Shown: positions 640 to 60,979 of the stretch, in pieces
Layout of the letters: the number at the start of each line of letters is the position of its first letter
Position numbering within the stretch: position 1 is the stretch's first letter
Assembly (NCBI RefSeq): GCF_006345805.1
Contig: NC_043010.1
Location: 19,158,001 to 19,222,000 of the forward strand
Source: Octopus sinensis
Taxonomy: Eukaryota
Direction: 5' to 3'
Length of the DNA: 64,000 nucleotides
Notes under the pieces: generated by a model
Database searches by the model: none
Told to the model about the DNA's origin: nothing
The model's input: only the letters and a program-made list of their open reading frames with translations
Translations under genes and position numbers: made by a program

Positions 640-895
640 AACGATGGAGATGTACTACAGTGCCAGCTGTTCACTACCAGTGAACTAAGATAACACCTAT
701 TATTTTTCGAGCACCTTCTGGAGTATTCGAGCGGTTCCAAGTAGTGCTGTTTTCTGCAAGTGCTCCACCCTTATTGCAGCCCCTATTTCTTCCATGTACT
801 TCTCAAGATTTTTACTCACTGTTCCCAGGGTTCCGACAATTATTGGTACTGCTGCCACCTTTTTTCATCGACCACAACTGCTTAACCTCCCATGC
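640..895 (-). mobile_element. C-terminal remnant of an RLE-type (R4/HERO/NeSL-like) non-LTR retrotransposon
   Basis: Minus strand reads ...VPIIVGTLGTVSKNLEKYMEEIGAAIRVEHLQKTALLGTARIL... Confidence 0.75.
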
Positions 896-954
896 TAACC
901 TGTCTATTATTATTATTATTTCCAATTATTGAAATTTTTTCTTATTTTTTCTAG

Positions 955-19314
<18,360 letters not shown>

Positions 19315-20524: not shown

Positions 20525-22437
20525 CTGTATGGCAAGTAGCTTGCTTCCCAACCACATGGTTCTGGGTTCAGTCCCACTGCATGGCACCTTGGGCCGACCA
20601 GTGTCTTGTGAGTGAATTTGGTAGACGGAAACTGTAAGAAGCATGTCATATATCTCTTATTATAAAAGGCAGATTTTATCTGCCTCCCTTTGGGAGTTAT
20701 AAAAATCTACAATATAGGATTTCTTCAATTACAATTTACCTAGCATTTTTAAGAGTACAATGCATCGCGTCATGCCAGGTCCAGTTTTTAAAATTTAAAC
20801 TCCAATTAAGCAAAATTTACAGAAAACTCACATTCTGGTGTGTGTGTCACATGCTTTTCTTAGTCTGGTTTACACCACACGCAAACGCACACACACAGTG
20901 GGCAACGAATAAAATGAAAGTAAATAGCGACAGTGATTTGAGGAAGACTAAACTGAAAGTATTTTAACCACTACTCAAAAAATAAAAAAACACAGCAAAC
21001 AGAAACAAATAAATACATAACCATTTACTCCTCACACAATTTCTTCAATTAGAATTTACTAAGATTTTTCAGAGTACTTCAGTGGGTGATGCCATAAAAA
21101 ATTTCTTTCAATTTTACCACCAATAAGACAAAATTCGAGAAAACTCAATATTTTAACCTATCACTCCGAAAGCATTGATGTACATGTGTGCGTGCGTGAG
21201 TGTGTGTGTCATTCCTCACACACACGCATACACATACATATACACTACATACACATACAACTACATACAAACACGTGTGTGTTTGTTATTAGTAAAAAAG
21301 GCGCCAAAACTCAACTCACTTATCATTCCAACACATTTGCAAAGACACACGGACGGACAGAAAAGGTAAATTGGTTTTTATTTTACTCTGTATATATTTT
21401 ATTATATAATATTATATATAGATATATGTATATATAATTGCAGTATGAAACAGTGTTTATGTATAAACAGACGACACTTATATTAGTTACCAAGCCGCCC
21501 GAATTTACCTATTCATATTTAAATGAGAATATCAGAGCAAATCTCTTTAGTACATTCGTGAAAACACGTATTATACTTCGTAAACACTTCAACTACAGTT
21601 TTGTACAAAAATCGAAGTGTAATTTTAATTCCGTGATTATGGGAGATTTTTTTCCGAAATTTGTTCCTATTGTGTTTTCAAAATTTGTAATTCTGACAAA
21701 AAAATGGATACGAATTTCATTATATCAAGCAGCGAGTCAGAATTCGAAGGATTTTCTACTGAAGACCTTCATAAATCTAACTCTATGACTGAAAAAAAAA
21801 AAGCATCTTTATATAAGAGTGAAGTGTGTGTCTGTCTCCTACGATTTAGATTCCTAACTACTCCCACATTTTGCGCTGCAGTTTAACCAAAAGCGGGTCT
21901 TATAGTCGTGATTCATATCGAGCCCTTCTGGGTATTAGCGTGCGTCTACGATGAGTCTACGATTTAAAAAAATTTACCATCATATTTTTCCATTTTAATG
22001 CATTTTTTTCGCTTTTATATAAGGGAAGTAACTCTCTAAAAATATCTACGATGTGTCAACGATTTAAAAAAAAAATTACCTTAATTTTTTTTCAATTTTT
22101 AATGCATTTTTTTGCTATTTTTTGGCTATAACTCTCTAAAAATGCTTATATAGTTATTTCCCTTACAAACCCGAGCAACGCCGGGCGATACTGCTAGTAT
22201 ATATATATATATATATGTATATGTATGTATATATATGTTTGTGTCTCCGTGTTTGTTCCCCTCCCAACATCGCTTGACAACTGATGCTGGTGGGTTTACG
22301 TCCTTGTAACTTAGCGGTTCGGCAGAAGAGACTGATAGAATAAGTACAAGGCTTACAAAGTATAAGTCCCGGTGTTCATTTGCTTGACTAGAGGCGGCGT
22401 TCCAGCATAGCCGCAGTCAAATGACTGAAACAAAAGA
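20525..22437 (+). mobile_element. CORE-type SINE split in two (20525-20652 and 22198-22437)
   Basis: 5' half stops at its internal (AT)n; 3' half resumes after the Helitron CTAG. Confidence 0.85.
20653..22197 (+). mobile_element. Composite 1.5-kb Helitron insertion
   Basis: A|TCTCTTATTATAAAA start, second Helitron head at 21806, hairpin + CTAG|T end at 22197. Confidence 0.75.
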
Positions 22438-22522
22438 TATATATATAGATACATATAATATATATAAAGATATATAGATATATATATATAAAGATATATG
22501 TAAAGATATATATATATATATA

Positions 22523-25500
22523 TTAAGGTATGTAGAAAAATACAACATGGACAAGAACGTATAACTCATAGAAGACGATACAATAAACATGGATAGGACA
22601 TTCGAACCCCTCAGTCTTCAGTCAAGAACCGGATCATCGTAGTAATTTCGGCTGATTAATCTTGAGATTACTAGATCACGGCCAGCCCTCCAAGAAAAAC
22701 TAAGCTGGAAGCGTAGATTTCCTGGAAGAAGGATCGAATGCATACGAACACCAGGACAGCAAAAGGGACAGATATAAAAAAAACGGTTAATATAGGGCGT
22801 AACAAATATCAGAAAATCAAAAAAAAAATGTGTGTAATAGGTGTAAAACAACTTCCTATGAACGAATATGAAAAAAAAAATTCGCGCACGCGAAAGGGGG
22901 GTGGGGGAGAGGCCTCGGAAAATTCACATCGGGAAGTTCCGAAAGCGTCTGAGGGGCTGACCCGGGCACCAAAACAAAAAAAAAATAGTGTAATATGTGT
23001 AAAACAACTTGCTCTAAACGAATATGAAATAAAAAATGCGCTCTCGAGAAAGAGGGGTGGGGGAGAGGCCTCGGAAAATTCACATCGGGAAGTTCCGAAA
23101 GCGTCTGAGGGGCTGACCCGGGCACCAAAACAAAAAAAAAATAGTGTAATATGTGTAAAACAACTTGCTCTAAACGAATATGAAATAAAAAATGCGCTCT
23201 CGAGAAAGAGGGGTGGGGGAGAGGCCTCGGAATATTTATATCGGGAATTTCCGAAAGCGTCTGAACCGGGCACAAAAACAAAAACAAAAACAGCGTAATA
23301 GGTGTAAAACAACTTGCTCTAAACGACTATCATGAAAAAAATGCGCGCTCGCGAAAGGGGGGTGGGGGAGAGGCTTCGGAAATTTCACATCTTCAGTCCA
23401 CGGCCTTTAAACTAAGAAAAAATAGTGTAATTGGTGTAAAACTACTTGTTCTAAACGAGTATCAAGAACACACACTCACACATGAATCATAAAATCATAT
23501 TTCGCAAAAAAAAAAAATAAAGAGAAGAAATTCTGGAAAAAGTGAAGAAATATTGGATCTCCGCCATGTGAATCAAAATACGTGTCAGAAACATCTTGAA
23601 ATACTACAGAAATTATGTTACGAAAATGATAATGTATACATACCTCTTTGAGTGGTCCATCGATAATGATGATTAAGAAATGAGTTGGATTTGAACTCAG
23701 AATATTGACTAACACAACTACATACTACAAGACTCAAAATATTCAGCCAAGTCACCACCCTTTAACTAGCAATAATAATAACATCAATAACATAACAGCC
23801 AAAAGATTTATTTGTTCTGAAAATAACAATCATAGTAAATAAATATGTTCTTTAATATTCACATTCATGTGCACAGTTAAACACACTTACATACAAACAG
23901 TCACGCATGCATAATACAGAACGGAACACATAAATGAAGGATGCATTACTTAGTATATATTACATCTAGAGAATTTTGATTAATAAGTCAAATATGCAAA
24001 TTATAAAGATAATTAATTGCTTTACTAAACAGTGTTGTAAAGGTGAAAAAATAAATTTGGGAAAAAAATACACGCCAAAACTAATTAATAAAGGATAATT
24101 AGGGAAGGATTGACACAAAATAATAATTTTTTCTGTCTCTTTTTTTCTGATAAATGCATCTTAATAAGTGAGAAGAATTGCATATATCTGAACTATTTCA
24201 AAGAAAAGCATAAATTTAATGTTTAAAATAGCTTTAACCAAGGAATGAGATCCAACATTTCTTCACTTTTTCCAGAATTTCTTCTCTTCTCTTTATTTAT
24301 TTTTTTTTGCGAAATACGGAGTTTATGATTCATGTGTGAGTGTGTGTTCTTGATACTCGTTTAGAACAAGTAGTTTTACACCAATTACACTATTTTTTCT
24401 TAGTTTAAAGGCCGTGGACTGAAGATGTGAAATTTCCGAAGCCTCTCCCCCACCCCCCTTTCGCGAGCGCGCATTTTTTTCATGATAGTCGTTTAGAGCA
24501 AGTTGTTTTACACCTATTACGCTGTTTTTGTTTTTGTTTTTGTGCCCGGTTCAGACGCTTTCGGAAATTCCCGATATAAATATTCCGAGGCCTCTCCCCC
24601 ACCCCTCTTTCTCGAGAGCGCATTTTTTATTTCATATTCGTTTAGAGCAAGTTGTTTTACACATATTACACTATTTTTTTTTTGTTTTGGTGCCCGGGTC
24701 AGCCCCTCAGACGCTTTCGGAACTTCCCGATGTGAATTTTCCGAGGCCTCTCCCCCACCCCCCTTTCGCGAGCGCGCATTTTTTTCATGATAGTCGTTTA
24801 GAGCAAGTTGTTTTACACCTATTACGCTGTTTTTGTTTTTGTTTTTGTGCCCGGTTCAGACGCTTTCGGAAATTCCCGATATAAATATTCCGAGGCCTCT
24901 CCCCCACCCCTCTTTCTCGAGAGCGCATTTTTTTTTCATATTCGTTTAGAGCAAGTTGTTTTACACATATTACACTATTTTTTTTTTGTTTTGGTGCCCG
25001 GGTCAGCCCCTCAGACGCTTTCGGAACTTCCCGATGTGAATTTTCCGAGGCCTCTCCCCCACCCCCCTTTCGCGTGCGCGAATTTTTTTTTTCATATTCG
25101 TTCATAGGAAGTTGTTTTACACCTATTACACACATTTTTTTTTTGATTTTCTGATATTTGTTACGCCCTATATTAACCAAAAAAACAAAAAACAATAATG
25201 GAATACAGAAACATGAAATACAGAAGCATTAACGGTGAAAACAACAAGTGTCTTACGACTGATAACAAGCAAACAAATTTTTTCTCTGGCGCATTGGAAA
25301 AAGCCTTTATAGCGGCGGACGAAGAACAACGATGTTAACACGACGAGGGTCAGGAGCTGAAAGGCAGATTTCGGCCAACAGTCACGTGACAGAGAAGAGG
25401 GAAAAGAAAAGAAGAGAGAGAGAGAAAAGGGGGACAAAACGCAACAAAGAGAGAGAAGAGAAAGAAGGAATCAGAGAGGAGAAGGGATGGGTGTCGAAGA

Positions 25501-26380
25501 ATGACCTGTGAGTGCAGAGCGAGACAAAGAAATAGGAGGGTAGTGGAAGACTAGACCAAAGGATCAGAGGAAAGAGAAGATGAATAGAGAGAAAGTAAAA
25601 ATGAGAGAGAGAGAGAGACAAACAGAGAGTCGTACCAATTATTAAGAATATGTGTTCACATTAATGATAAAGGGGGTACGGGGCGCCTGGAATATATGTT
25701 AAGGTATGTAGAAAAATACAACATGGACAAGAACGTATAACTCATAGAAGACGATACAATAAACATGGACAGGACATTCGAACCCCTCAGTCTTCAGTCA
25801 AGAACCGGATCATCGTAGTAATTTCGGCTGATTAATCTTGAGATTACTAGATCACGGCCAGCCCTCCAAGAAAAACTAAGCTGGAAGCGTAGATTTCCTG
25901 GAAGAAGGATCGAATGCATACGAACACCAGGACAGCAAAAGGGACAGATATAAAAAAAACAAAAAACAATAATGGAATACAGAAACATGAAATACAGAAG
26001 CATTAACGGTGAAAACAACAAGTGTCTTACGACTGATAACAAGCAAACAAATTTTTTCTCTGGCGCATTGGAAAAAGCCTTTATAGCGGCGGACGAAGAA
26101 CAACGATGTTAACGCGACGAGGGTCAGGAGCTGAAAGGCAGATTTCGGCCAACAGTCACGTGACAGAGAAGAGGGAAAAGAAAAGAAAGAGAGAGAGAGA
26201 AAAGGGGGACAAAACGCAACAAAGAGAGAGAAGAGAAAGAAGGAATCAGAGAGGAGAAGGGATGGGTGTCGAAGAATGACCTGTGAGTGCAGAGCGAGAC
26301 AAAGAAATAGGAGGGTAGTGGAAGACTAGACCAAAGGATCAGAGGAAAGAGAAGATGAATAGAGAGAAAGTAAAAATGAG
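22523..26380 (-). mobile_element. Tandemly duplicated ~0.7-0.8 kb element, Penelope pseudo-LTR-like, between (TA)n tracts
   Basis: Copy 1 = 22523-22784 + 25179-25697; copy 2 = 25698-26380; only ~3 differences seen. Penelope identity is an inference from tandem layout and (TA)n flanks. Confidence 0.6.
22785..25178. mobile_element. Non-autonomous foldback-type DNA transposon (Merlin- or MULE/Foldback-like)
   Basis: GGTTAATATAGGGCGTAAC...GTTACGCCCTATATTAACC; arms 22785-23561 and 24247-25178 built of 149-156 bp subrepeats; 8-bp TSD AAAAAAAC. Confidence 0.93.
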
Positions 26381-26683
26381 ATATATATATATATACATTG
26401 CTGCTTTGGTGACCCAGTAGGAATGGGTGTTAAAAAGTACTAATACAACACATAGGTGGTGGTTTCCAATCGCTTCCAGAAATTACAAGAGACCTAGTTA
26501 AAAATTTTAATGGCGGTGCCCCAGCATGGCTGCAGCTCTGAGCTTCAACTACATATATATATATGTTAAGAAGAGCATCCAGCCGTAGAAACCATGCCAA
26601 ATCAGACGAGTCTGGTGCAGCTTGCCAGCTCTGGTCCAACCCATGCCAGCATGTACAACAGACGTTAAATGATGATATATATA

Positions 26684-28574: not shown

Positions 28575-28975
28575 ATGGTATTATTACAACCTTCATCCTC
28601 ACCTCCACCACCACTGCCATCGCCGTCATCGCCACGACCACTGCCACCACAGTCACCACCACCATCACGACCGTCACCACCACTAACATCACCACCACCT
28701 CCACCACTGTCACCATCGTCACCGCTACCATCACGACCGTCACCTTCACCACCACCACCATCACCGCCACCATCACCACCACCACCACAAACATCACCAC
28801 CACCACCACCACCACCACCACCACCAACATCACCACCACCACCACCACCACCACAACCACCACCACCACCATCACCACCACCAACAACAACAACATCACC
28901 ACCACCACCACCACCACCACCACCAACATCACCACCACCACCACAACCACCACCACCACCACCACCACCAGCGTC
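28575..28975. repeat. Imperfect (CAC)n microsatellite, ~400 bp
   Basis: CAC/CAT/CAA triplets; source of the poly-Pro and poly-Val ORFs. Confidence 0.95.
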
Positions 28976-35364: not shown

Positions 35365-36356
35365 TTATTCTTTTATTTGTTTCAGTCATTTGACTGCGTC
35401 CATGCTGGAGTACCGCCTTTAGTCGAACAAATCGATACCAGGACTTATCTTTTTAAAGCCAAGTATTTATTCTATCGGCCTCTTTTGCCGAACTACCAAG
35501 TTACGGGGACGTAAACAAACTAACATCGGTTATCAAACGATGGTGAGGGGACAAACACAGACACACATATACGACGGGCTTCTTTCAGTTTCCGTCTACC
35601 AAATCCACTCACAAGGTTTTGGTTGGTCCGAGGCTATAGTAGAAGACACTTGCCCAAGGCGCCATACAGTAGGACTGAACCCGGAACCATGTGGTTGGTA
35701 TGCAAGCTACTTACCACACAGCCACTCCTGCTAATATGCTGATATTTGTTATCGTTTAATCAGCTATTCCGCTTCTGGTTCTCAGAACCCCAATTTCTCA
35801 AGATTGATACTGAGACAGTTTGTTACAAAACCCAGTACCCCAATAACCACGGGTATAAATCTGAATTTGTAGTCCGGGTGACGTCGTATGCTAATATGAC
35901 AGAGCAGATATAGTGATTTGGGACGGAGAAGAGAAACTACGAACAGTAGTGGGAACCAGTTGCTCGGCAGATGTCAGCAGAAAGCTAAAGATCTGAGTGA
36001 AAAAGAAAACACGAGTAATGTGCAACGACGTCACACGGACGTCAAGTTTAGATTTATACCCGTGGTTATTGGGGCACTGGGTTTTGTAAAGAACTGTCCC
36101 AGGATCAATCTTGAGAAATTAGGGTTCCCTGAACCAGAAGCAAAATGGATAATTAAACGATAATAAATACAAGCCATCAATGAAACTATCTAGGCGTAGG
36201 AGTGGGTGTGTGGTGAGTAGCTTGCTTACCAACCACATGGTTCCAGGTTCAGTCCCACTGCGTGGCACCTTGGGCAAGTCTCTTCCACTATAGCCTCGGA
36301 CCGACCAAAGCCTTGTGAGTGGATTTGGTAGACGGAAACTGAAAGAAGGTCGTCGA

Positions 36357-36399
<43 letters not shown>

Positions 36400-36630
36400 C
36401 ATGTGTGTGTGTGTATGTTTGTGTGTCTGTGTTTGTTCCCCCCCACCACCAACATCGCTTGACAACCGATGCTGGTGTGTTTACGTCCCCGTAACTTAAC
36501 GGTTCGGCAAAAAGGGACTGATAGAATAAGTACTAGGCTTACAAAGAATAAGTCCTGGGGGTAGATTTGCTCGACTAAAGGCGGTGCTCCAGCATGGCCA
36601 CGGTCAACTGATTGAAACAAGTAAAAGAGG
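35365..36630. repeat. Inverted composite: SINE(-)+LINE(-) | spacer | LINE(+)+SINE(+)
   Basis: 35745-35888 is the reverse complement (~80% by eye) of 36023-36170, each joined outward to a CORE SINE. Confidence 0.75.
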
Positions 36631-40410: not shown

Positions 40411-41699
40411 TGACAAACATTGAGAACGTATTTCGTTTCTGGAGTTGGTTTGCAAGATTCTTTATATGAGTTCGTGTGTTGAAGCATATTCTGTTGTGTC
40501 TGGGGAGAGTCATTTTCTATTTGTGCCTTATAATGTAACACACTCACCGGTAAAATTTCCACTTATTTGTTATTTTAATTTTCCTAAAATGTTCGTTGCG
40601 TCTTGCAACCTTTTCAATAGTCTTGAATGTGTTACATTATAAGGCACAAAAAGAAAATGACTCTCCCCAGACACAACAGAATTGAGAACGTAAACAACAG
40701 AGATTGACCGAACACAGGCAAATATAAGAAGGTCATGCTTGTCATAGAATCACTTCTGTGAAGAAACGAAACCGTCCTGCGGCTTTCAGTTGTAGTGATG
40801 TCTTGTTGTATACACTCCACCGCCCAATACAATAATCAGATTATTTTTTTATCTATTGACAAAGTTTTTATATATTGACAAAGTTAATTTACATAAAATC
40901 TCTAAATTCATTCACTCCCGCGCATATACACTTACATCTACATCTACACACACACACACACACACACACATGAATACACTTATATCCACCTCTACAAAGA
41001 CACACACACACACACATTTATGAATGTGTGTGAATGGAAATGTAGAGTTGATTGATGTGAATAATATTAATGGAAACATACGTGTGTTTAGCAATGGAAT
41101 GATGTACAGACTTTTTTGCGCGCGCACGCGAGAAAGAGAGAGAACGGGCGAAGCCTTAGACGCACACAAAGGCAGAATAGGTACGTGTGTATGTCCGTGT
41201 GCGCACGTTTGTGTGCGTGTAGGTGTGTGAGTGGTAGTGTCTCTGAGTGCATGCCTGTATGTGTGCTTGGATACATGGCTAGGTACACGTGTGAATGCTT
41301 CTTTTAAGACACACACACACACACACAGCTCACGATATATTCTTTTATTCTTTTATTCTTTTAAAAAAGAATAATTCTTTCAGTCATTTGACTACGGCCA
41401 TGCTGGAGCACTGCCTTTGGTCGAAAAAATCGACCCCAAGACTTATTTTTAAGTCCATCGTTTTTTTACTGAACCGCTAAGTTACGGGGACGTAACCACA
41501 CCAACATCGATTGCTAAGTGATGGTGGGTGGGACAAACACAAACACAAATACATACATCCACACACACACACACACATACATATATGTGCTTGCCCTAAG
41601 TGTCACGCAGTGGGACCTGAACCCAGAACCGTGTAGTTGGGAGGCAAGCTTCTACCACATAGCCACGCCTGCGCCTGTACATAATTTTAGTGGATGTGT

Positions 41700-42772: not shown

Positions 42773-42919
42773 GACACATACACACACATGTACGTACGCA
42801 CGCACGCACGCATGCATGCATACTCAAACACACGCACGCACACAGACAGACACACACACTCAAATATACATATTCGTAGATTTAAACATACATTATACAT
42901 TTGTCTGTCTGTCTATCTG

Positions 42920-42988
<69 letters not shown>

Positions 42989-42990
42989 TG
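41700..42990. repeat. Compound microsatellite field (CA, TA, TATG, CTAT)
   Basis: Direct reading; similar fields at 29050-30050, 33800-34040, 52570-53160, 55050-55500, 59380-59720, 62160-62250. Confidence 0.95.
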
Positions 42991-43673
42991 TTTCAGTCAT
43001 TAGACTGCGGCCATGCTGGGGCACCGCCTTGAAAAATTTCTTAGTCGACCAGAGTACTTTTTTAAAAACTTAGTACGTATTCTATCGGTTTTTTTTGCCG
43101 AACCGCTAGGCTACGGGGACCTGAACACTCCGATACTGGTTGTCAAGTGGGGAACAACCACAGACCCTCCCCACACACACACATGTATGCTGTCATTTAC
43201 CGAAGATTACAAATTCGACCTTTATGATGTTCTCTTCATGGAAATGTTGGTCTTTTCGTCAGAAACAATTGTCTGGGAATATGAAATACAAGCATAATCC
43301 ATTTTAGCATCCAATCTGATTCATTTCATTTATTTGATGAAAATTTATTGAACTTTGTTTAATAAATTAGCTTTTATATATATATATATGACGAGGCAAA
43401 GCATTCCTAAATGCAAAGTCAGAAATCCGGGATCTAGAATTATCCAGTAATCTTTTACTAGTTTTATCTTGTCTCTTTGTTTTCTCTCCGTGTTGATATA
43501 TGGACAATTAAAGTGGTTTTAAAGTCAGATCATGGCTGCTATTTTCAGCATGGGGGTATCTCGTAGATTCCCTAATTTATAATTTTAATAATTATTACCT
43601 CTGAAGGTTATTTTTCCATGCTGGCCACTTGATAAAATCGTTATTTTATTTTAAATTAACGATCTTATCCTTA

Positions 43674-47989: not shown

Positions 47990-48640
47990 ACCATGTGACT
48001 TGGAACGACTAAATCAATCACATATGTTGACGAATTTAAACTATCTGGGCACGAAAATAACAATAGACGGAGATTGCATTCATGAAATAAATACAAGAAT
48101 CAGCAAAGCCAATCAATCATTCGTTATGTTAAACTCAATATGGAAATCACCAATACTCAGCAAGAGCACCAAAATACGATTTTACAAAAGCAACATACTT
48201 AGCATCCTCCTCTACGGATCTGAATTTTGGAAAACAACCAAAAGTATTGAAAAAAGAAATTGGTGGTGTTTCAAAAGAAATGTTTACGAAACATGTTGAA
48301 GGTCTAATGGCCGAATATGATCTCGAATAGCCAAGTGCGCACCAAGACTAACGTGAAACTAATAAAGAAAACTGTTGAAGCAAGGGGATGGAAATGGCTG
48401 GGTAGAGTTTGTTGCTATAAACCGGGCTTAATTGTTGGGATCGCATTGCACTGGGTTCCACAAGGCAAAAGAAGACGTGACCGACCAAAGGAAACATGGC
48501 GGAGAACAATAACAAAAGAGCTTAAAAGCAGAAGGTTAACAATGGAACAAGTTGTCAAGGATGGTCTCAGTGTTAGAAGGCGGAATGAACATGCTGTCGC
48601 CTCAAGTGCCACAAGGTTCAATGTGAACCGAATGAATGAA
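47990..48640 (+). pseudogene. RTE-clade LINE ORF C-terminal remnant
   Basis: YLGTKIT..EINTRISKANQSF..LLYGSEFW..WKWLGRV..QGKRRRDRPKETWRRTI, frameshifted. Confidence 0.9.
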
Positions 48641-48789
48641 CGAACTATTTACAGATATTAACTATCATGACTTTACTGAATCGATTATGTCTAATTTGCA
48701 TAAAGTGTTTTTTTTTTTCGTTAACTAAATAGTCAATTATTACTTGACACACAAACAAGTTGATAGACTGGAAATAGAGGAACATCTCA

Positions 48790-50520: not shown

Positions 50521-51564
50521 GATGGGAAATACGAGGAGAGTTCCCCAACAGAGGATGGGAAATCCGAGAAGGGTTCCGCAACAGAGGATGGGAAATCCGA
50601 GGAGGGTTCACCAACAGAGGATGGGAAATCCGAGGAGGGTTCACCAACAGAGGATGGGAAATACGAGAAGGACTCCGCAACAGAGGATGGGAAATACGAG
50701 GAGGGTTCACCAACAGAGGATGGGAAATACGAGGAGGGTTCACCAACAGAGGATGGGAAATACGAGGAGGGTTCCCCAACAGAGGATGGGAAATCCGAGG
50801 AGGGTTCCCCAACTGAGGATGGAAAATCCGAGGAGGGTTCACCAACAGAGGATGGGAAATACGAGGAGGGTTCACCAACAGAGGATGGGAAATACGAGGA
50901 GGGTTCACCAACAGAGGGGGAAATCCGAGGAGGGTTTCCCACAGAGGATGGGAAATCCGAGGAGGGTTCCCAACAAGGATGGGAAATACGAGGAGGGTTC
51001 ACCAATGGATGGGAAATCCGAGGAGGGTTCCCCAACAGAGGATGGGAAATACGAGAGGGTTCCCCAACAGAGGATGGGAAATACGAGGAGGGTTCCCCAA
51101 CTGAGGATGGAAATCCGAGAGGGGTTCACCAACAGAGGATGGGAAATACGAGAAGGGTTCCCCAACTGAGGATGGGAAATACGAGGAGGTTTCACAACAG
51201 AGGATGGGAAATACAGGAGGGTTCACCAACAGGAGGGAAATACGAGAGTTCACCAACAGAGGATGGGAAATACGAGGATGGTTCCCAACAGAATATAGGA
51301 AATACGAGGAGGGTTCCCAAACTGAGGATGGGAAATACGAGGAGGGTTCATCAACAGAGGATGGGAAATCCGAGGAGAGTTCACCAACAGAGGATGGGAA
51401 ATACGAGGAGGGTTCACCAACAGAGGATGGGAAATACGAGGAGGGTTCCCCAACAGAGGATGGGAAATACGAGGAGGGTTCACCAACAGAGGATGGGAAA
51501 TACGAGGAGGGTTCACCAACAGAGGATGGGAAATACGAGGAGGGTTCCCCAACAGAGGATGGGG
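50521..51564 (+). repeat. 33-bp minisatellite, ~32 units (possibly a coding exon)
   Basis: Unit GATGGGAAATACGAGGAGGGTTCACCAACAGAG = DGKYEEGSPTE; middle third has 1-3 nt deletions. Confidence 0.95.
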
Positions 51565-56092: not shown

Positions 56093-56157
<65 letters not shown>

Positions 56158-56747
56158 ATGTATACTAGCAGAGATACTCTGCCTTGCTCGGGATTAAAAT
56201 GGCATAGATTTTTATTGTTTTACTTGTTTCATTCATGTGACTGCGGCCATGCTGGAGCACCGCCGTTGGTCGAAGAAATCAACCACAGGATTTATTCTTT
56301 GTAAGCCTAGTACTCATTTTGTCAGTGTCTTTTACCAAACCGCTTAGTTACAGGAATGTAAATACAGCAACATCAGTTGTCAAGCAATGGTGGGGGTACA
56401 AACACAAAACACACGCATACACATACACAAATATATACGTATATACGACAGTCTTCTTTCAGTTTCCGAGCACGAAATCCACTGACAGGGTTTTGGTTGG
56501 CCTGAGGCTATAATAAGCGTATATATGTATATAGGGAAAGTTTATGAAAAAAAACAGAAGATGAAGACAGATGGCGCACAAAACAAACAGATGTATTAGT
56601 ATAGCGCTCAGGAATAGAAAAAGTCTTTTACGTTTCGAGCCTACGCTCTTCTACAGAAAGGTACACAGAAAAACAAGGAGAAAACAGAGAAAAAAAGGAG
56701 AGAAAAAAAGAGAGAAAAAAGAAAAAAATATGTATTAATATAATATA

Positions 56748-60879: not shown

Positions 60880-60979
60880 NNNNNNNNNNNNNNNNNNNNN
60901 NNNNNNNNNNNNNNNNNNNNNNNNNNNNNNNNNNNNNNNNNNNNNNNNNNNNNNNNNNNNNNNNNNNNNNNNNNNNNNN
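60880..60979. other. Assembly gap (100 N), followed by (GAA)n
   Basis: Run of N. Confidence 0.99.

What the first reader, a model, noticed from the sequence alone, without database searches (positions are those of the whole stretch)
22785..25178. Very young foldback-type transposon with GG...CC ends, 8-bp TSD and its own empty site next door
Seen: 2394-bp insert with termini GGTTAATATAGGGCGTAAC / GTTACGCCCTATATTAACC; arms of ~777 and ~932 bp whose outer ~240 bp look identical; AT-rich 685-bp spacer with no transposase. The duplicate at 25951-25970 reads gatat-A8-c-A6-c-aataatgg, whereas the filled site has an extra AAAAAAAC, so the TSD is exactly 8 bp. Knowledge: GG...CC ends with 8-9 bp TSDs fit Merlin (IS1016-like); long arms of tandem subrepeats fit Foldback/MULE elements. 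Inference: a recently mobile, possibly undescribed non-autonomous family with an autonomous partner elsewhere in the genome.
Basis: partly seen in the sequence, partly recalled or inferred. Interest (0 to 1): 0.72.

Follow-up and report, generated by a model that had tools for sequence, protein, structure and literature searches.

The report
Young non-autonomous Merlin foldback transposon
This is a recently inserted 2.4-kb DNA transposon without its own transposase; a related copy carrying a transposase remnant places it in the known Merlin superfamily, so it is a clean but fairly ordinary example of a known kind of mobile element.

Summary
Window 22785-25178 is a 2394-bp insert with ends GGTTAATATAGGGCGTAAC / GTTACGCCCTATATTAACC. 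It is flanked by a perfect 8-bp duplication (AAAAAAAC). A 99.4%-identical tandem copy of the flank, 0.8 kb downstream, carries the uninterrupted target.

In the right register 773 of 776 positions match, and the arms differ mainly by one 149-bp subrepeat. The 685-bp middle is 27.7% GC with no reading frame longer than 64 codons.

The new result settles Merlin versus Foldback/MULE. The only relative found in about 1.8 billion proteins lies on a 2-kb metagenome contig (L001). It has homologous arms (65% identity, E 3e-47) and the same kind of terminus (…ATTAACC, where homology stops exactly). Between its arms lies a remnant of a Merlin/IS1595 transposase, 71% identical to an Octopus bimaculoides Merlin protein.

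GG ends, an 8-bp duplication and this relative place the element in Merlin. Merlin families with about 1-kb arms of mirrored subrepeats are already in Repbase (for example Merlin-N5_DR), so the architecture is not new.

I could not test whether this family is catalogued, how many copies exist, or whether it is still mobile, because no host genome was available. Interest is modest.

The parts
22777..22784 (.). Left copy of the 8-bp target-site duplication, AAAAAAAC
   Evidence: Identical to 25179-25186 and present once at the empty site.
22785..22803 (+). Left terminus GGTTAATATAGGGCGTAAC (starts with 5'-GG)
   Evidence: only two matches in the window, at the two ends; homology to L001 stops exactly at this end.
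22785..23561 (+). Left arm, 777 bp: about 53 nt of unique terminal sequence, then units A'(156) A(156) B(149) C, then a unique inner part
22814..23391 (+). Left-arm array of 156/149-bp subrepeats, 3.7 copies, 90% matches
   Evidence: TRF; unit alignment. The units are homologous to the L001 units.
23562..24246 (.). Non-repeated middle, 685 bp, 27.7% GC, no coding capacity (longest stop-free stretch 64 codons), no transposase remnant
   Evidence: tblastn with Merlin proteins gave nothing; no similarity to the middle of L001.
24247..25178 (-). Right arm, 932 bp, units A' B A B C read from the terminus inward; 773/776 identical to the left arm
24424..25150 (-). Right-arm array of subrepeats, period 156 (4.8 copies) with a 305-bp higher-order period (2.4 copies, 95% matches)
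24762..24910 (-). 149 bp present only in the right arm: a one-unit register shift between neighbouring subrepeats (unequal exchange or slippage)
   Evidence: (global alignment of the arms).
25160..25178 (-). Right terminus GTTACGCCCTATATTAACC (reverse complement of the left terminus)
25179..25186 (.). Right copy of the 8-bp target-site duplication, AAAAAAAC
25953..25960 (.). Single, uninterrupted AAAAAAAC target in the neighbouring duplicate of the flank (the empty site)
   Evidence: Joining the two flanks minus one TSD copy reproduces this sequence.
25692..26381 (+). Tandem duplicate (unit B, empty) of the flanking DNA 22516-22784 + 25187-25606 (unit A, filled); 686/690 identical with 1 gap
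25607..25691 (+). 85-bp junction between the two duplicate units. About 60 bp are found nowhere else in the window; the first ~30 bp are (GA)n-like and match a simple repeat at ~56100

Best explanation
The insert at 22785-25178 is a non-autonomous, foldback-shaped DNA transposon of the Merlin (IS1595/IS1016-like DDE) superfamily. It carries no transposase.

Inferred mechanism: a Merlin transposase encoded elsewhere in the genome recognises the GG-initiated termini, and probably conserved blocks inside the ~150-bp subrepeats of the arms. It cuts the element out and pastes it into a target cut with an 8-bp stagger. Repair of that stagger produced the AAAAAAAC duplication.

Shown here:
- the exact ends;
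- the perfect 8-bp duplication;
- an intact copy of the target in a 99.4%-identical duplicate of the flank;
- near-identity of the arms;
- homology of arms and terminus to an element that still encloses part of a Merlin transposase gene.

Inferred: mobilisation in trans, the DDE cut-and-paste chemistry, binding of the transposase to the subrepeats, and the recent date. The recent date rests on the perfect duplication, 0.4% arm divergence, and insertion after a duplication whose copies differ by 0.6%.

The arms differ by one 149-bp unit, which shows that the subrepeat arrays change by unequal exchange or slippage.
For: (1) Defined ends found only at the two ends of the insert. The outer 251 bp are perfectly complementary and the arms are 773/776 identical.

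(2) The duplication is a perfect 8 bp. Joining the flanks minus one copy reproduces the neighbouring duplicate at 99.4% over 690 bp.

(3) A search with the 143-aa arm frame against 1.84 billion representative proteins gave one hit, P0121 (E 5.6e-7), on contig L001. Element positions 1-473 align to L001 1706-1210 at 65% identity, E 3e-47. Homology stops exactly at ...ATTAACC in both. The first 7 nt (GGTTAAT) are identical, and the first unit motif starts at position 56 from the end in both. The unit architecture is shared.

(4) Between the inverted arms of L001 lies an 87-aa frame. It matches the C-terminal end of Pfam DDE_Tnp_IS1595 (E 2.1e-5, profile 93-151/153) and NCBIfam IS1595 transposase (E 3.7e-7, 154-212/215). 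It is 71% identical (54/76, E 6e-39) to Octopus bimaculoides KOF97081.1, which PMC8101967 lists as a Merlin transposase.

(5) Merlin is defined by terminal 5'-GG and 8- or 9-bp duplications (PMC8101967). Both are met here.

(6) Repbase Merlin families with long arms of mirrored subrepeats exist: Merlin-N5_DR (TIR 1000 bp, 113-bp units x5.2 in each arm), Merlin-1_DR and MERLIN2/4/5_CB.
Against: - This copy has no transposase. No Merlin remnant is present in the element or anywhere in the 64-kb window.
- The link to Merlin runs through a single relative that is only 65% identical in the arms. That relative is cut off by the end of a 2-kb metagenome contig, so its left terminus and its duplication are unseen.
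- The transposase piece in L001 is a fragment, scoring just below Pfam's curated cut-off (25 versus 27 bits).
- Only one insertion was seen, so the 8-bp length has n = 1, in an A-run that could slip.
- No other copy of the family was found in any searchable collection.
- Arm identity is not a clean clock, because palindromic arms can be homogenised by conversion.
Confidence: 0.8

Rival explanations
1. It is a non-autonomous member of the Mutator/Foldback group (MULE, Phantom-like), as most foldback elements are thought to be, and is moved by a MULE transposase.
For: Long arms of tandem subrepeats around a non-coding middle are the classic foldback shape. Most foldback elements have been assigned to Mutator. 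Tetris of Drosophila virilis, with 8-10-bp duplications, was assigned there on duplication length alone (PMC4079207). Eight bp is at the lower edge of the MULE range (my own knowledge).
Against: The only relative found encloses a Merlin-type transposase remnant, not a MULE-type one. The foldback shape is known to arise in several superfamilies (PMC4079207 citing Marzo 2008) and occurs in Repbase Merlin families. Drosophila FB makes 9-bp duplications (my own knowledge).
Confidence: 0.07
2. It belongs to another superfamily that makes 8-bp duplications: hAT, P/Galileo, Zisupton or Novosib. The last two are also reported in cephalopods.
For: An 8-bp duplication alone does not discriminate. PMC10294476 reports that, among molluscs, Zisupton and Novosib as well as Merlin are almost restricted to cephalopods.
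Against: The termini start with GGTTAAT. hAT ends follow (C/T)A(A/G)NG and P-type ends start with CA... (my own knowledge). The relative L001 carries a Merlin remnant. I could not check the end motifs of Zisupton or Novosib.
Confidence: 0.05
3. The transposon is real, but the 'empty site next door' is not a paralogue. The two 690-bp units are the two alleles of a heterozygous individual, one filled and one empty, which the assembler laid down in tandem.
For: The units differ by only 0.6%, which is within the heterozygosity I would expect for a marine invertebrate (my own knowledge). The scaffold is a draft with a 100-N gap at 60880-60979. The unit borders fall in simple repeats, (AT)n on the left and GA/TA runs on the right, where assemblers often err.
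Against: Between the units lies an 85-bp junction of which about 60 bp are unique. The sequence after unit A differs from that after unit B. A simple unresolved bubble would not produce either feature.
Confidence: 0.25
4. The empty unit once carried the element and lost it precisely. Replication slippage or microhomology-mediated repair between the two 8-bp duplicates, favoured by hairpin formation of the palindrome, would do this. The insertion would then predate the flank duplication.
For: Long palindromes flanked by short direct repeats are prone to precise deletion. This is known for bacterial transposons with inverted ends (my own knowledge). The arms here are 99.6% identical.
Against: It needs two events, duplication of a 3.1-kb filled unit and then a precise loss, where one insertion suffices. 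There is no footprint, and no trace of the element in unit B.
Confidence: 0.04
5. It is not a mobile element at all but a local inverted duplication or a chimeric-read assembly artefact.
For: Near-perfect palindromes can be produced by long-read chimeras. There is only one copy in the window.
Against: The insert has sharp ends, a perfect 8-bp target duplication and an intact target in the duplicate. The arms differ in unit number. An independent data set holds a diverged relative whose homology ends at the same terminal nucleotides.
Confidence: 0.02

Closest known systems
Merlin superfamily of DNA transposons (Feschotte 2004; survey in PMC8101967)
   Same: Terminal 5'-GG, an 8-bp target duplication, and a relative carrying a DDE_Tnp_IS1595-type transposase remnant. 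Non-autonomous derivatives are common in this superfamily.
   Different: Arms of 777/932 bp exceed the 24-462 bp quoted in the original description. This copy has no transposase, so membership rests on its ends, its duplication and one relative.
Merlin-N5_DR (zebrafish, Repbase), with Merlin-1_DR, Merlin-2_DR and MERLIN2/4/5_CB
   Same: Merlin-N5_DR is a non-autonomous Merlin with about 1000-bp terminal inverted repeats, each holding a tandem array (113-bp units x5.2) mirrored in the other arm (PMC8101967 S1 Table). That is the same foldback-like build.
   Different: A different host phylum. I could not compare sequences because Repbase is not at hand. Unit length here is 149-156 bp.
Octopus bimaculoides Merlin transposase KOF97081.1 (and KOF76718.1)
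   Same: The transposase remnant in the related element L001 is 71% identical over 76 residues to KOF97081.1 and 56% over 64 residues to KOF76718.1. O. bimaculoides is reported to hold 191 Merlin sequences.
   Different: These are proteins of possible autonomous partners.
L001 element (ENA ERZ23499442, scaffold_18719), uncharacterised
   Same: Homologous arms (65% identity, E 3e-47), the same terminus type (GGTTAAT...), the same distance from the end to the first unit, and the same order of motifs inside 160-177-bp units.
   Different: Older: its own arms are about 87% alike. It keeps a transposase remnant and has a different middle. It is too diverged to be the same family by the usual 80% rule. 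Its left end is missing.
Foldback elements: Drosophila FB, Tetris (D. virilis), Galileo (P superfamily)
   Same: Long inverted arms built of tandem subrepeats, a short non-coding middle, dependence on a transposase in trans, and variable unit number between arms. Tetris has 8-10-bp duplications.
   Different: FB and Tetris are assigned to Mutator and Galileo to P. The relative here points to Merlin. No sequence similarity was tested or is expected.

Membership tests
Merlin superfamily | Terminal inverted repeats that begin with 5'-GG | tested here: met
   Both ends read GGTTAATATAGGGCGTAAC. The criterion is from PMC8101967.
Merlin superfamily | Target-site duplication of 8 or 9 bp | tested here: met
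   AAAAAAAC on both sides and single at the empty site. This is one insertion only, in an A-rich target.
Merlin superfamily | Transposase with the DDE_Tnp_IS1595 domain, in the element or in an autonomous partner that shares its ends | tested here: inconclusive
   Absent from this copy and from the window. A relative with homologous arms and terminus (L001) encloses a C-terminal fragment: Pfam PF12762 E 2.1e-5 at 25 bits against a cut-off of 27; NCBIfam IS1595 E 3.7e-7; 71% identical to an octopus Merlin protein. No full-length partner with these ends was seen.
Merlin superfamily | Multiple copies in the genome sharing the ends, each with its own 8-9-bp duplication | not testable with these tools
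   The host genome is not available. There is one copy in the 64-kb window and none in the public collections searched.
Foldback / Mutator-like (MULE) elements | Long inverted arms made of tandem subrepeats | tested here: met
   This shape is not exclusive to MULE.
Foldback / Mutator-like (MULE) elements | Target duplication of 9 bp for FB, typically 9-10 bp for MULE | tested here: not met
   The duplication is 8 bp. The typical lengths are from my own knowledge. Tetris shows 8-10 bp, so this is a weak exclusion.
Foldback / Mutator-like (MULE) elements | MULE-type (MuDR/IS256-like) transposase in autonomous relatives | tested here: not met
   The only relative carries an IS1595/Merlin-type remnant. 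Pfam and NCBIfam returned no other family at E up to 1.
hAT superfamily | 8-bp duplication together with termini of the form (C/T)A(A/G)NG | tested here: not met
   The duplication length fits but the termini begin GGTTA. The motif is from my own knowledge.
piggyBac superfamily | Insertion at TTAA, which is duplicated | tested here: not met
   The target is AAAAAAAC. The TTAA at positions 3-6 is inside the element and absent from the empty site.
MITE (miniature inverted-repeat element) | Small size, usually under about 0.8 kb, and high copy number | tested here: not met
   The element is 2394 bp. Copy number is not testable. It is non-autonomous like a MITE but not miniature.

The most novel reading that the evidence does not exclude
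This is an uncatalogued, currently active lineage of Merlin foldback elements, probably in cephalopods. Its ~150-bp arm subrepeats are conserved as arrays of transposase-binding sites across at least two diverged families (window element and L001). They gain and lose units by unequal exchange, so they could seed satellite DNA. The filled and empty pair would then be a segregating insertion polymorphism rather than a fixed paralogue difference.
Probability: 0.3. Interest if true: 0.4.

Novelty: new member of a known kind. Interest (0 to 1): 0.3.

Why it matters
It is a well-preserved single example: exact ends, a perfect target duplication and an internal control for the empty site. That makes it a good seed for annotating a Merlin family in this genome, and a candidate presence/absence marker.

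It also gives sequence evidence that a foldback shape, often read as a sign of Mutator, here belongs to Merlin. TE annotators should therefore not classify such elements on shape alone.

If the family is still active, its transposase could become a cut-and-paste tool for its host group, though that is speculative and rests on my memory-based guess that the host is a cephalopod. The long near-perfect palindrome is also a potential site of genome instability.

None of this changes current understanding of transposons.

Tried and rejected
Searches that found nothing:
- Other copies in the window. None, either with the terminal 19-mer at up to 3 mismatches, the unit core, or blastn of the whole element.
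- Public DNA collections. The exact terminus, the unit core and two degenerate patterns conserved between the window element and L001 gave nothing in viral contigs or JGI metagenome contigs.
- Protein route. The arm frame on the + strand gave nothing in 5.8 billion proteins. Exact look-ups of four arm ORFs gave nothing. The 87-aa Merlin fragment shared no words with anything in that collection. The 90% cluster of P0121 has a single member.
- Literature. No held paper links foldback with Merlin, shrimp or cephalopods in a useful way. The sample accession of L001 appears in no paper.

Ideas rejected:
- That the terminal 30 nt are repeated inside each subrepeat as extra copies of a terminal binding site. 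The local alignment score was no better than shuffles, for both the window element (1786 of 2000 shuffles reached it) and L001 (1966 of 2000).
- That the middle is a decayed transposase or is related to the middle of L001. There was no blastn or tblastx signal and no tblastn signal with octopus Merlin proteins.

Host identification:
- SMU1 exons gave at best 89-94% identical fragments on short contigs with no intron similarity, so the species is not in the collections.
- A 28-mer that I recalled from an octopus SINE occurs 12 times in the window, twice exactly. This is a lead from memory, not a test. The string is in no held paper.

Other:
- Rfam and tRNA scans of the window were empty.
Full report
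**What is in the sequence.** Window 22785-25178 is a 2394-bp insert. Its first 19 nt, GGTTAATATAGGGCGTAAC, recur as a reverse complement at its last 19 nt and nowhere else in the 64 kb, even with three mismatches allowed (0.02 expected by chance).

The outer 251 bp of the two arms are perfectly complementary. A gapped global alignment of the left arm (22785-23561, 777 bp) with the reverse complement of the right arm (24247-25178, 932 bp) gives 773 identities in 776 aligned positions. The right arm has one block of 149 bp that the left lacks (24762-24910), and there are a few 1-5-bp indels near the inner ends. The lower identities in the raw repeat list (93-95%) come from out-of-register pairings of subrepeats.

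Each arm has about 53 nt of unique terminal sequence, then units of 156 or 149 bp, then a unique inner part. Read from the terminus, the left arm is A' A B C and the right arm is A' B A B C. The extra 149 bp is what an unequal exchange or slippage between neighbouring units would give.

The middle (23562-24246) is 685 bp with 27.7% GC, against 38.3% for the window. Its longest stop-free stretch is 64 codons.

**Target and empty site.** The filled site reads GATAT-A8-C | element | A7-C-A6-C-AATAATGG. The DNA around the insert (22516-22784 plus 25187-25606) is repeated in tandem at 25692-26381 with 686/690 identities and one gap. There the site reads GATAT-A8-C-A6-C-AATAATGG. Joining the two flanks after removing one AAAAAAAC reproduces the second unit. 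So the duplicated target is 8 bp and the second unit shows the unoccupied state.

The two units are separated by an 85-bp junction of which about 60 bp are found nowhere else in the window; its first ~30 bp are (GA)n-like and match a simple repeat near 56100. The unit borders lie in simple repeats. I cannot tell from the sequence whether this is a real tandem duplication or two alleles placed in tandem by the assembler; the scaffold has a 100-N gap at 60880-60979. The junction and the different sequences following each unit favour a real duplication. Either way the comparison is valid. If the units are alleles, the insertion is heterozygous.

**No transposase here.** The element, and the whole window, contain nothing resembling a Merlin transposase (tblastn). 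Ten of the most protein-like reading frames of the window gave no transposon domain in Pfam.

The long frames that run through the arms exist because 156 is a multiple of three. They have no relatives except the one described next.

**A relative, and what it carries.** DNA scans of viral and metagenome collections were negative, as was the first protein search. A full scan of 1.84 billion representative proteins with the 143-aa arm frame gave one hit, P0121 (E 5.6e-7). It is encoded on a 2051-bp ENA metagenome contig, L001.

L001 is itself a foldback element. It has inverted arms of 160-177-bp units that are homologous to the units here, with the same order of conserved blocks. Element positions 1-473 align with L001 1706-1210 at 65% identity, E 3e-47. 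The homology ends at the same nucleotide...ATTAACC, in both. The first seven nucleotides (GGTTAAT) are identical, and the first unit motif begins at position 56 from the end in both. The left end of L001 is cut off by the contig end, so its duplication cannot be read.

Between the arms of L001, on the minus strand (895-1158), is an 87-codon frame...[31 protein letters not shown].... It matches the last third of Pfam DDE_Tnp_IS1595 (E 2.1e-5, profile 93-151 of 153; 25 bits against a cut-off of 27, as expected for a fragment). It also matches the NCBIfam IS1595 transposase model (E 3.7e-7, 154-212 of 215). No other family was returned.

In the alignments and sequence sets supplied with PMC8101967 the same block (VNHS.NFVDP....HT..IE..W...K) is the third conserved block of Merlin transposases. 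The most similar sequence there is Octopus bimaculoides KOF97081.1. BLASTP gives 54/76 identities, E 6e-39, including the tail VRPGIRAR.LKQYLSRF. tblastn extends this to 87 residues.

L001 is therefore best read as an internally deleted Merlin element that has lost the 5' part of its gene. No separate inverted repeats surround the remnant, which argues against a nested insertion.

**Classification.** PMC8101967, citing Feschotte 2004, describes Merlin as having inverted repeats with a conserved terminal 5'-GG and 8- or 9-bp duplications. Both are met here. The third criterion, the transposase, is met only through the relative.

The foldback shape does not point away from Merlin. The S1 Table of the same paper lists Repbase Merlin families with very long inverted repeats containing mirrored tandem arrays:
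- Merlin-N5_DR: non-autonomous, TIR 1000 bp, 113-bp units x5.2 at 531-1114 and 3193-3775.
- Merlin-1_DR and Merlin-2_DR.
- Several C. briggsae families.
- A non-autonomous shrimp family with 325-bp repeats.

That list has no cephalopod entry. Tetris of D. virilis, a similar-looking element with 8-10-bp duplications, was placed in Mutator on duplication length alone, for lack of a partner (PMC4079207). The present case shows why that is risky.

hAT, P and piggyBac are excluded by the termini or the target. Zisupton and Novosib, which also make 8-bp duplications and occur in cephalopods (PMC10294476), cannot be excluded on the ends alone. They are disfavoured by L001.

**How it most likely works.** A Merlin DDE transposase made elsewhere binds the ends, excises the element and inserts it at a target cut with an 8-bp stagger. 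Filling in the stagger gives the AAAAAAAC repeat. This step is inferred from the family. The products (ends, duplication, intact target) are what is shown.

Several blocks inside the units are conserved between the window element and L001 although the arms are only 65% alike. Examples are AAATGCGCG.TCGCGAAAG, GGAGAG..C.CGGAA and TTCAC.TC. This pattern would fit repeated protein-binding sites, but I did not test it. My specific idea that the units carry copies of the terminal motif failed a shuffle test.

The insertion is young by three signs: a perfect duplication, arms 0.4% diverged, and insertion into one of two units that differ by 0.6%. Arm identity can, however, be maintained by conversion in a palindrome.

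A less parsimonious alternative is that the empty unit lost the element precisely, by slippage between the 8-bp repeats.

**Context.** The window is a repeat-rich animal genome. It holds SMU1 exons on the + strand (976-1377, 12912-13391, 15918-16115, 19216-19311). The element therefore lies about 3.5 kb downstream of the SMU1 stop codon, outside the coding sequence.

A 28-mer I recalled from an octopus SINE occurs 12 times in the window. Together with the octopus-like Merlin remnant in L001, the report of 191 Merlin sequences in O. bimaculoides, and the near-restriction of Merlin to cephalopods among molluscs, this suggests a cephalopod host. That rests partly on memory and was not tested. The species itself is not in the searchable collections.

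**Limits.** There is one insertion and one relative, and no host genome, Repbase or Dfam. I could not count copies, tabulate duplications, find the autonomous partner, or check whether the family is catalogued.

**Verdict.** It is a new member, or an unverified known member, of a known kind. It is a useful seed for annotation and a neat case study, but not surprising to a transposon specialist.

Noticed in passing
window 976-1377, 12912-13391, 15918-16115, 19216-19311 (+): Exons of a SMU1 (WD40 spliceosome factor) gene. The last exon is 97% identical to the human C-terminus, and the coding sequence ends near 19311. The transposon lies about 3.5 kb downstream of it.
   Followed up: partly
window 4996, 5408, 8352, 9055, 10412, 10995, 12444, 14733(-), 15831(-), 16490, 19634, 26565: Twelve copies of a SINE-like repeat containing GTTAGGAAGGGCATCCAGCTGTAGAAAC, mostly within the SMU1 introns. 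I recall this motif from octopus SINEs, which would make the host a cephalopod. This is from memory and was not verified.
   Followed up: partly
window 22300-22436; also 36485-36620, 35376-35504(-), 56224-56355(-), 42914-43029(-), 17315-17433, 41375-41407(-): A second short interspersed repeat of about 135 bp, with copies 78-91% identical (the last only a 33-bp fragment). At 22300-22436 it is followed by an (AT)n run. The tandem duplication that holds the empty site starts right after that run.
   Followed up: no
window 22516-26381: Tandem duplication of about 690 bp (99.4% identical) with an 85-bp junction (about 60 bp unique) at 25607-25691 and simple repeats at the unit borders. It is either a true duplication or two alleles laid in tandem by the assembler.
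   Followed up: partly
window 50521-51563: A 33-bp minisatellite, 32 copies, 89% matches (consensus GATGGGAAATACGAGGAGGGTTCACCAACAGAG). It stays open in several reading frames and produces spurious long ORFs.
   Followed up: partly
window 28600-28970: A (CAC)n microsatellite of about 124 copies. More generally the window has very many AT, AC, AG and TATG/TACA runs.
   Followed up: no
window 60880-60979: A run of exactly 100 N: a scaffold gap, so the assembly is a draft and local structure should be checked against reads.
   Followed up: no
window 48317-48661 (+): A 114-aa frame (...GRVCCYKPGLIVGIALHWVPQGKRRRDRPKETWRRTI...) that looks to me like the C-terminal tail of an RTE-type LINE. Pfam gave no hit.
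   Followed up: partly
L001 1-2051: The related metagenome contig is itself an uncharacterised, internally deleted Merlin foldback element. Its arms are about 87% alike and it keeps a transposase remnant at 895-1182 (-). Its sample (ENA ERZ23499442, SAMN16869657) probably contains animal DNA, possibly from a cephalopod.
   Followed up: partly
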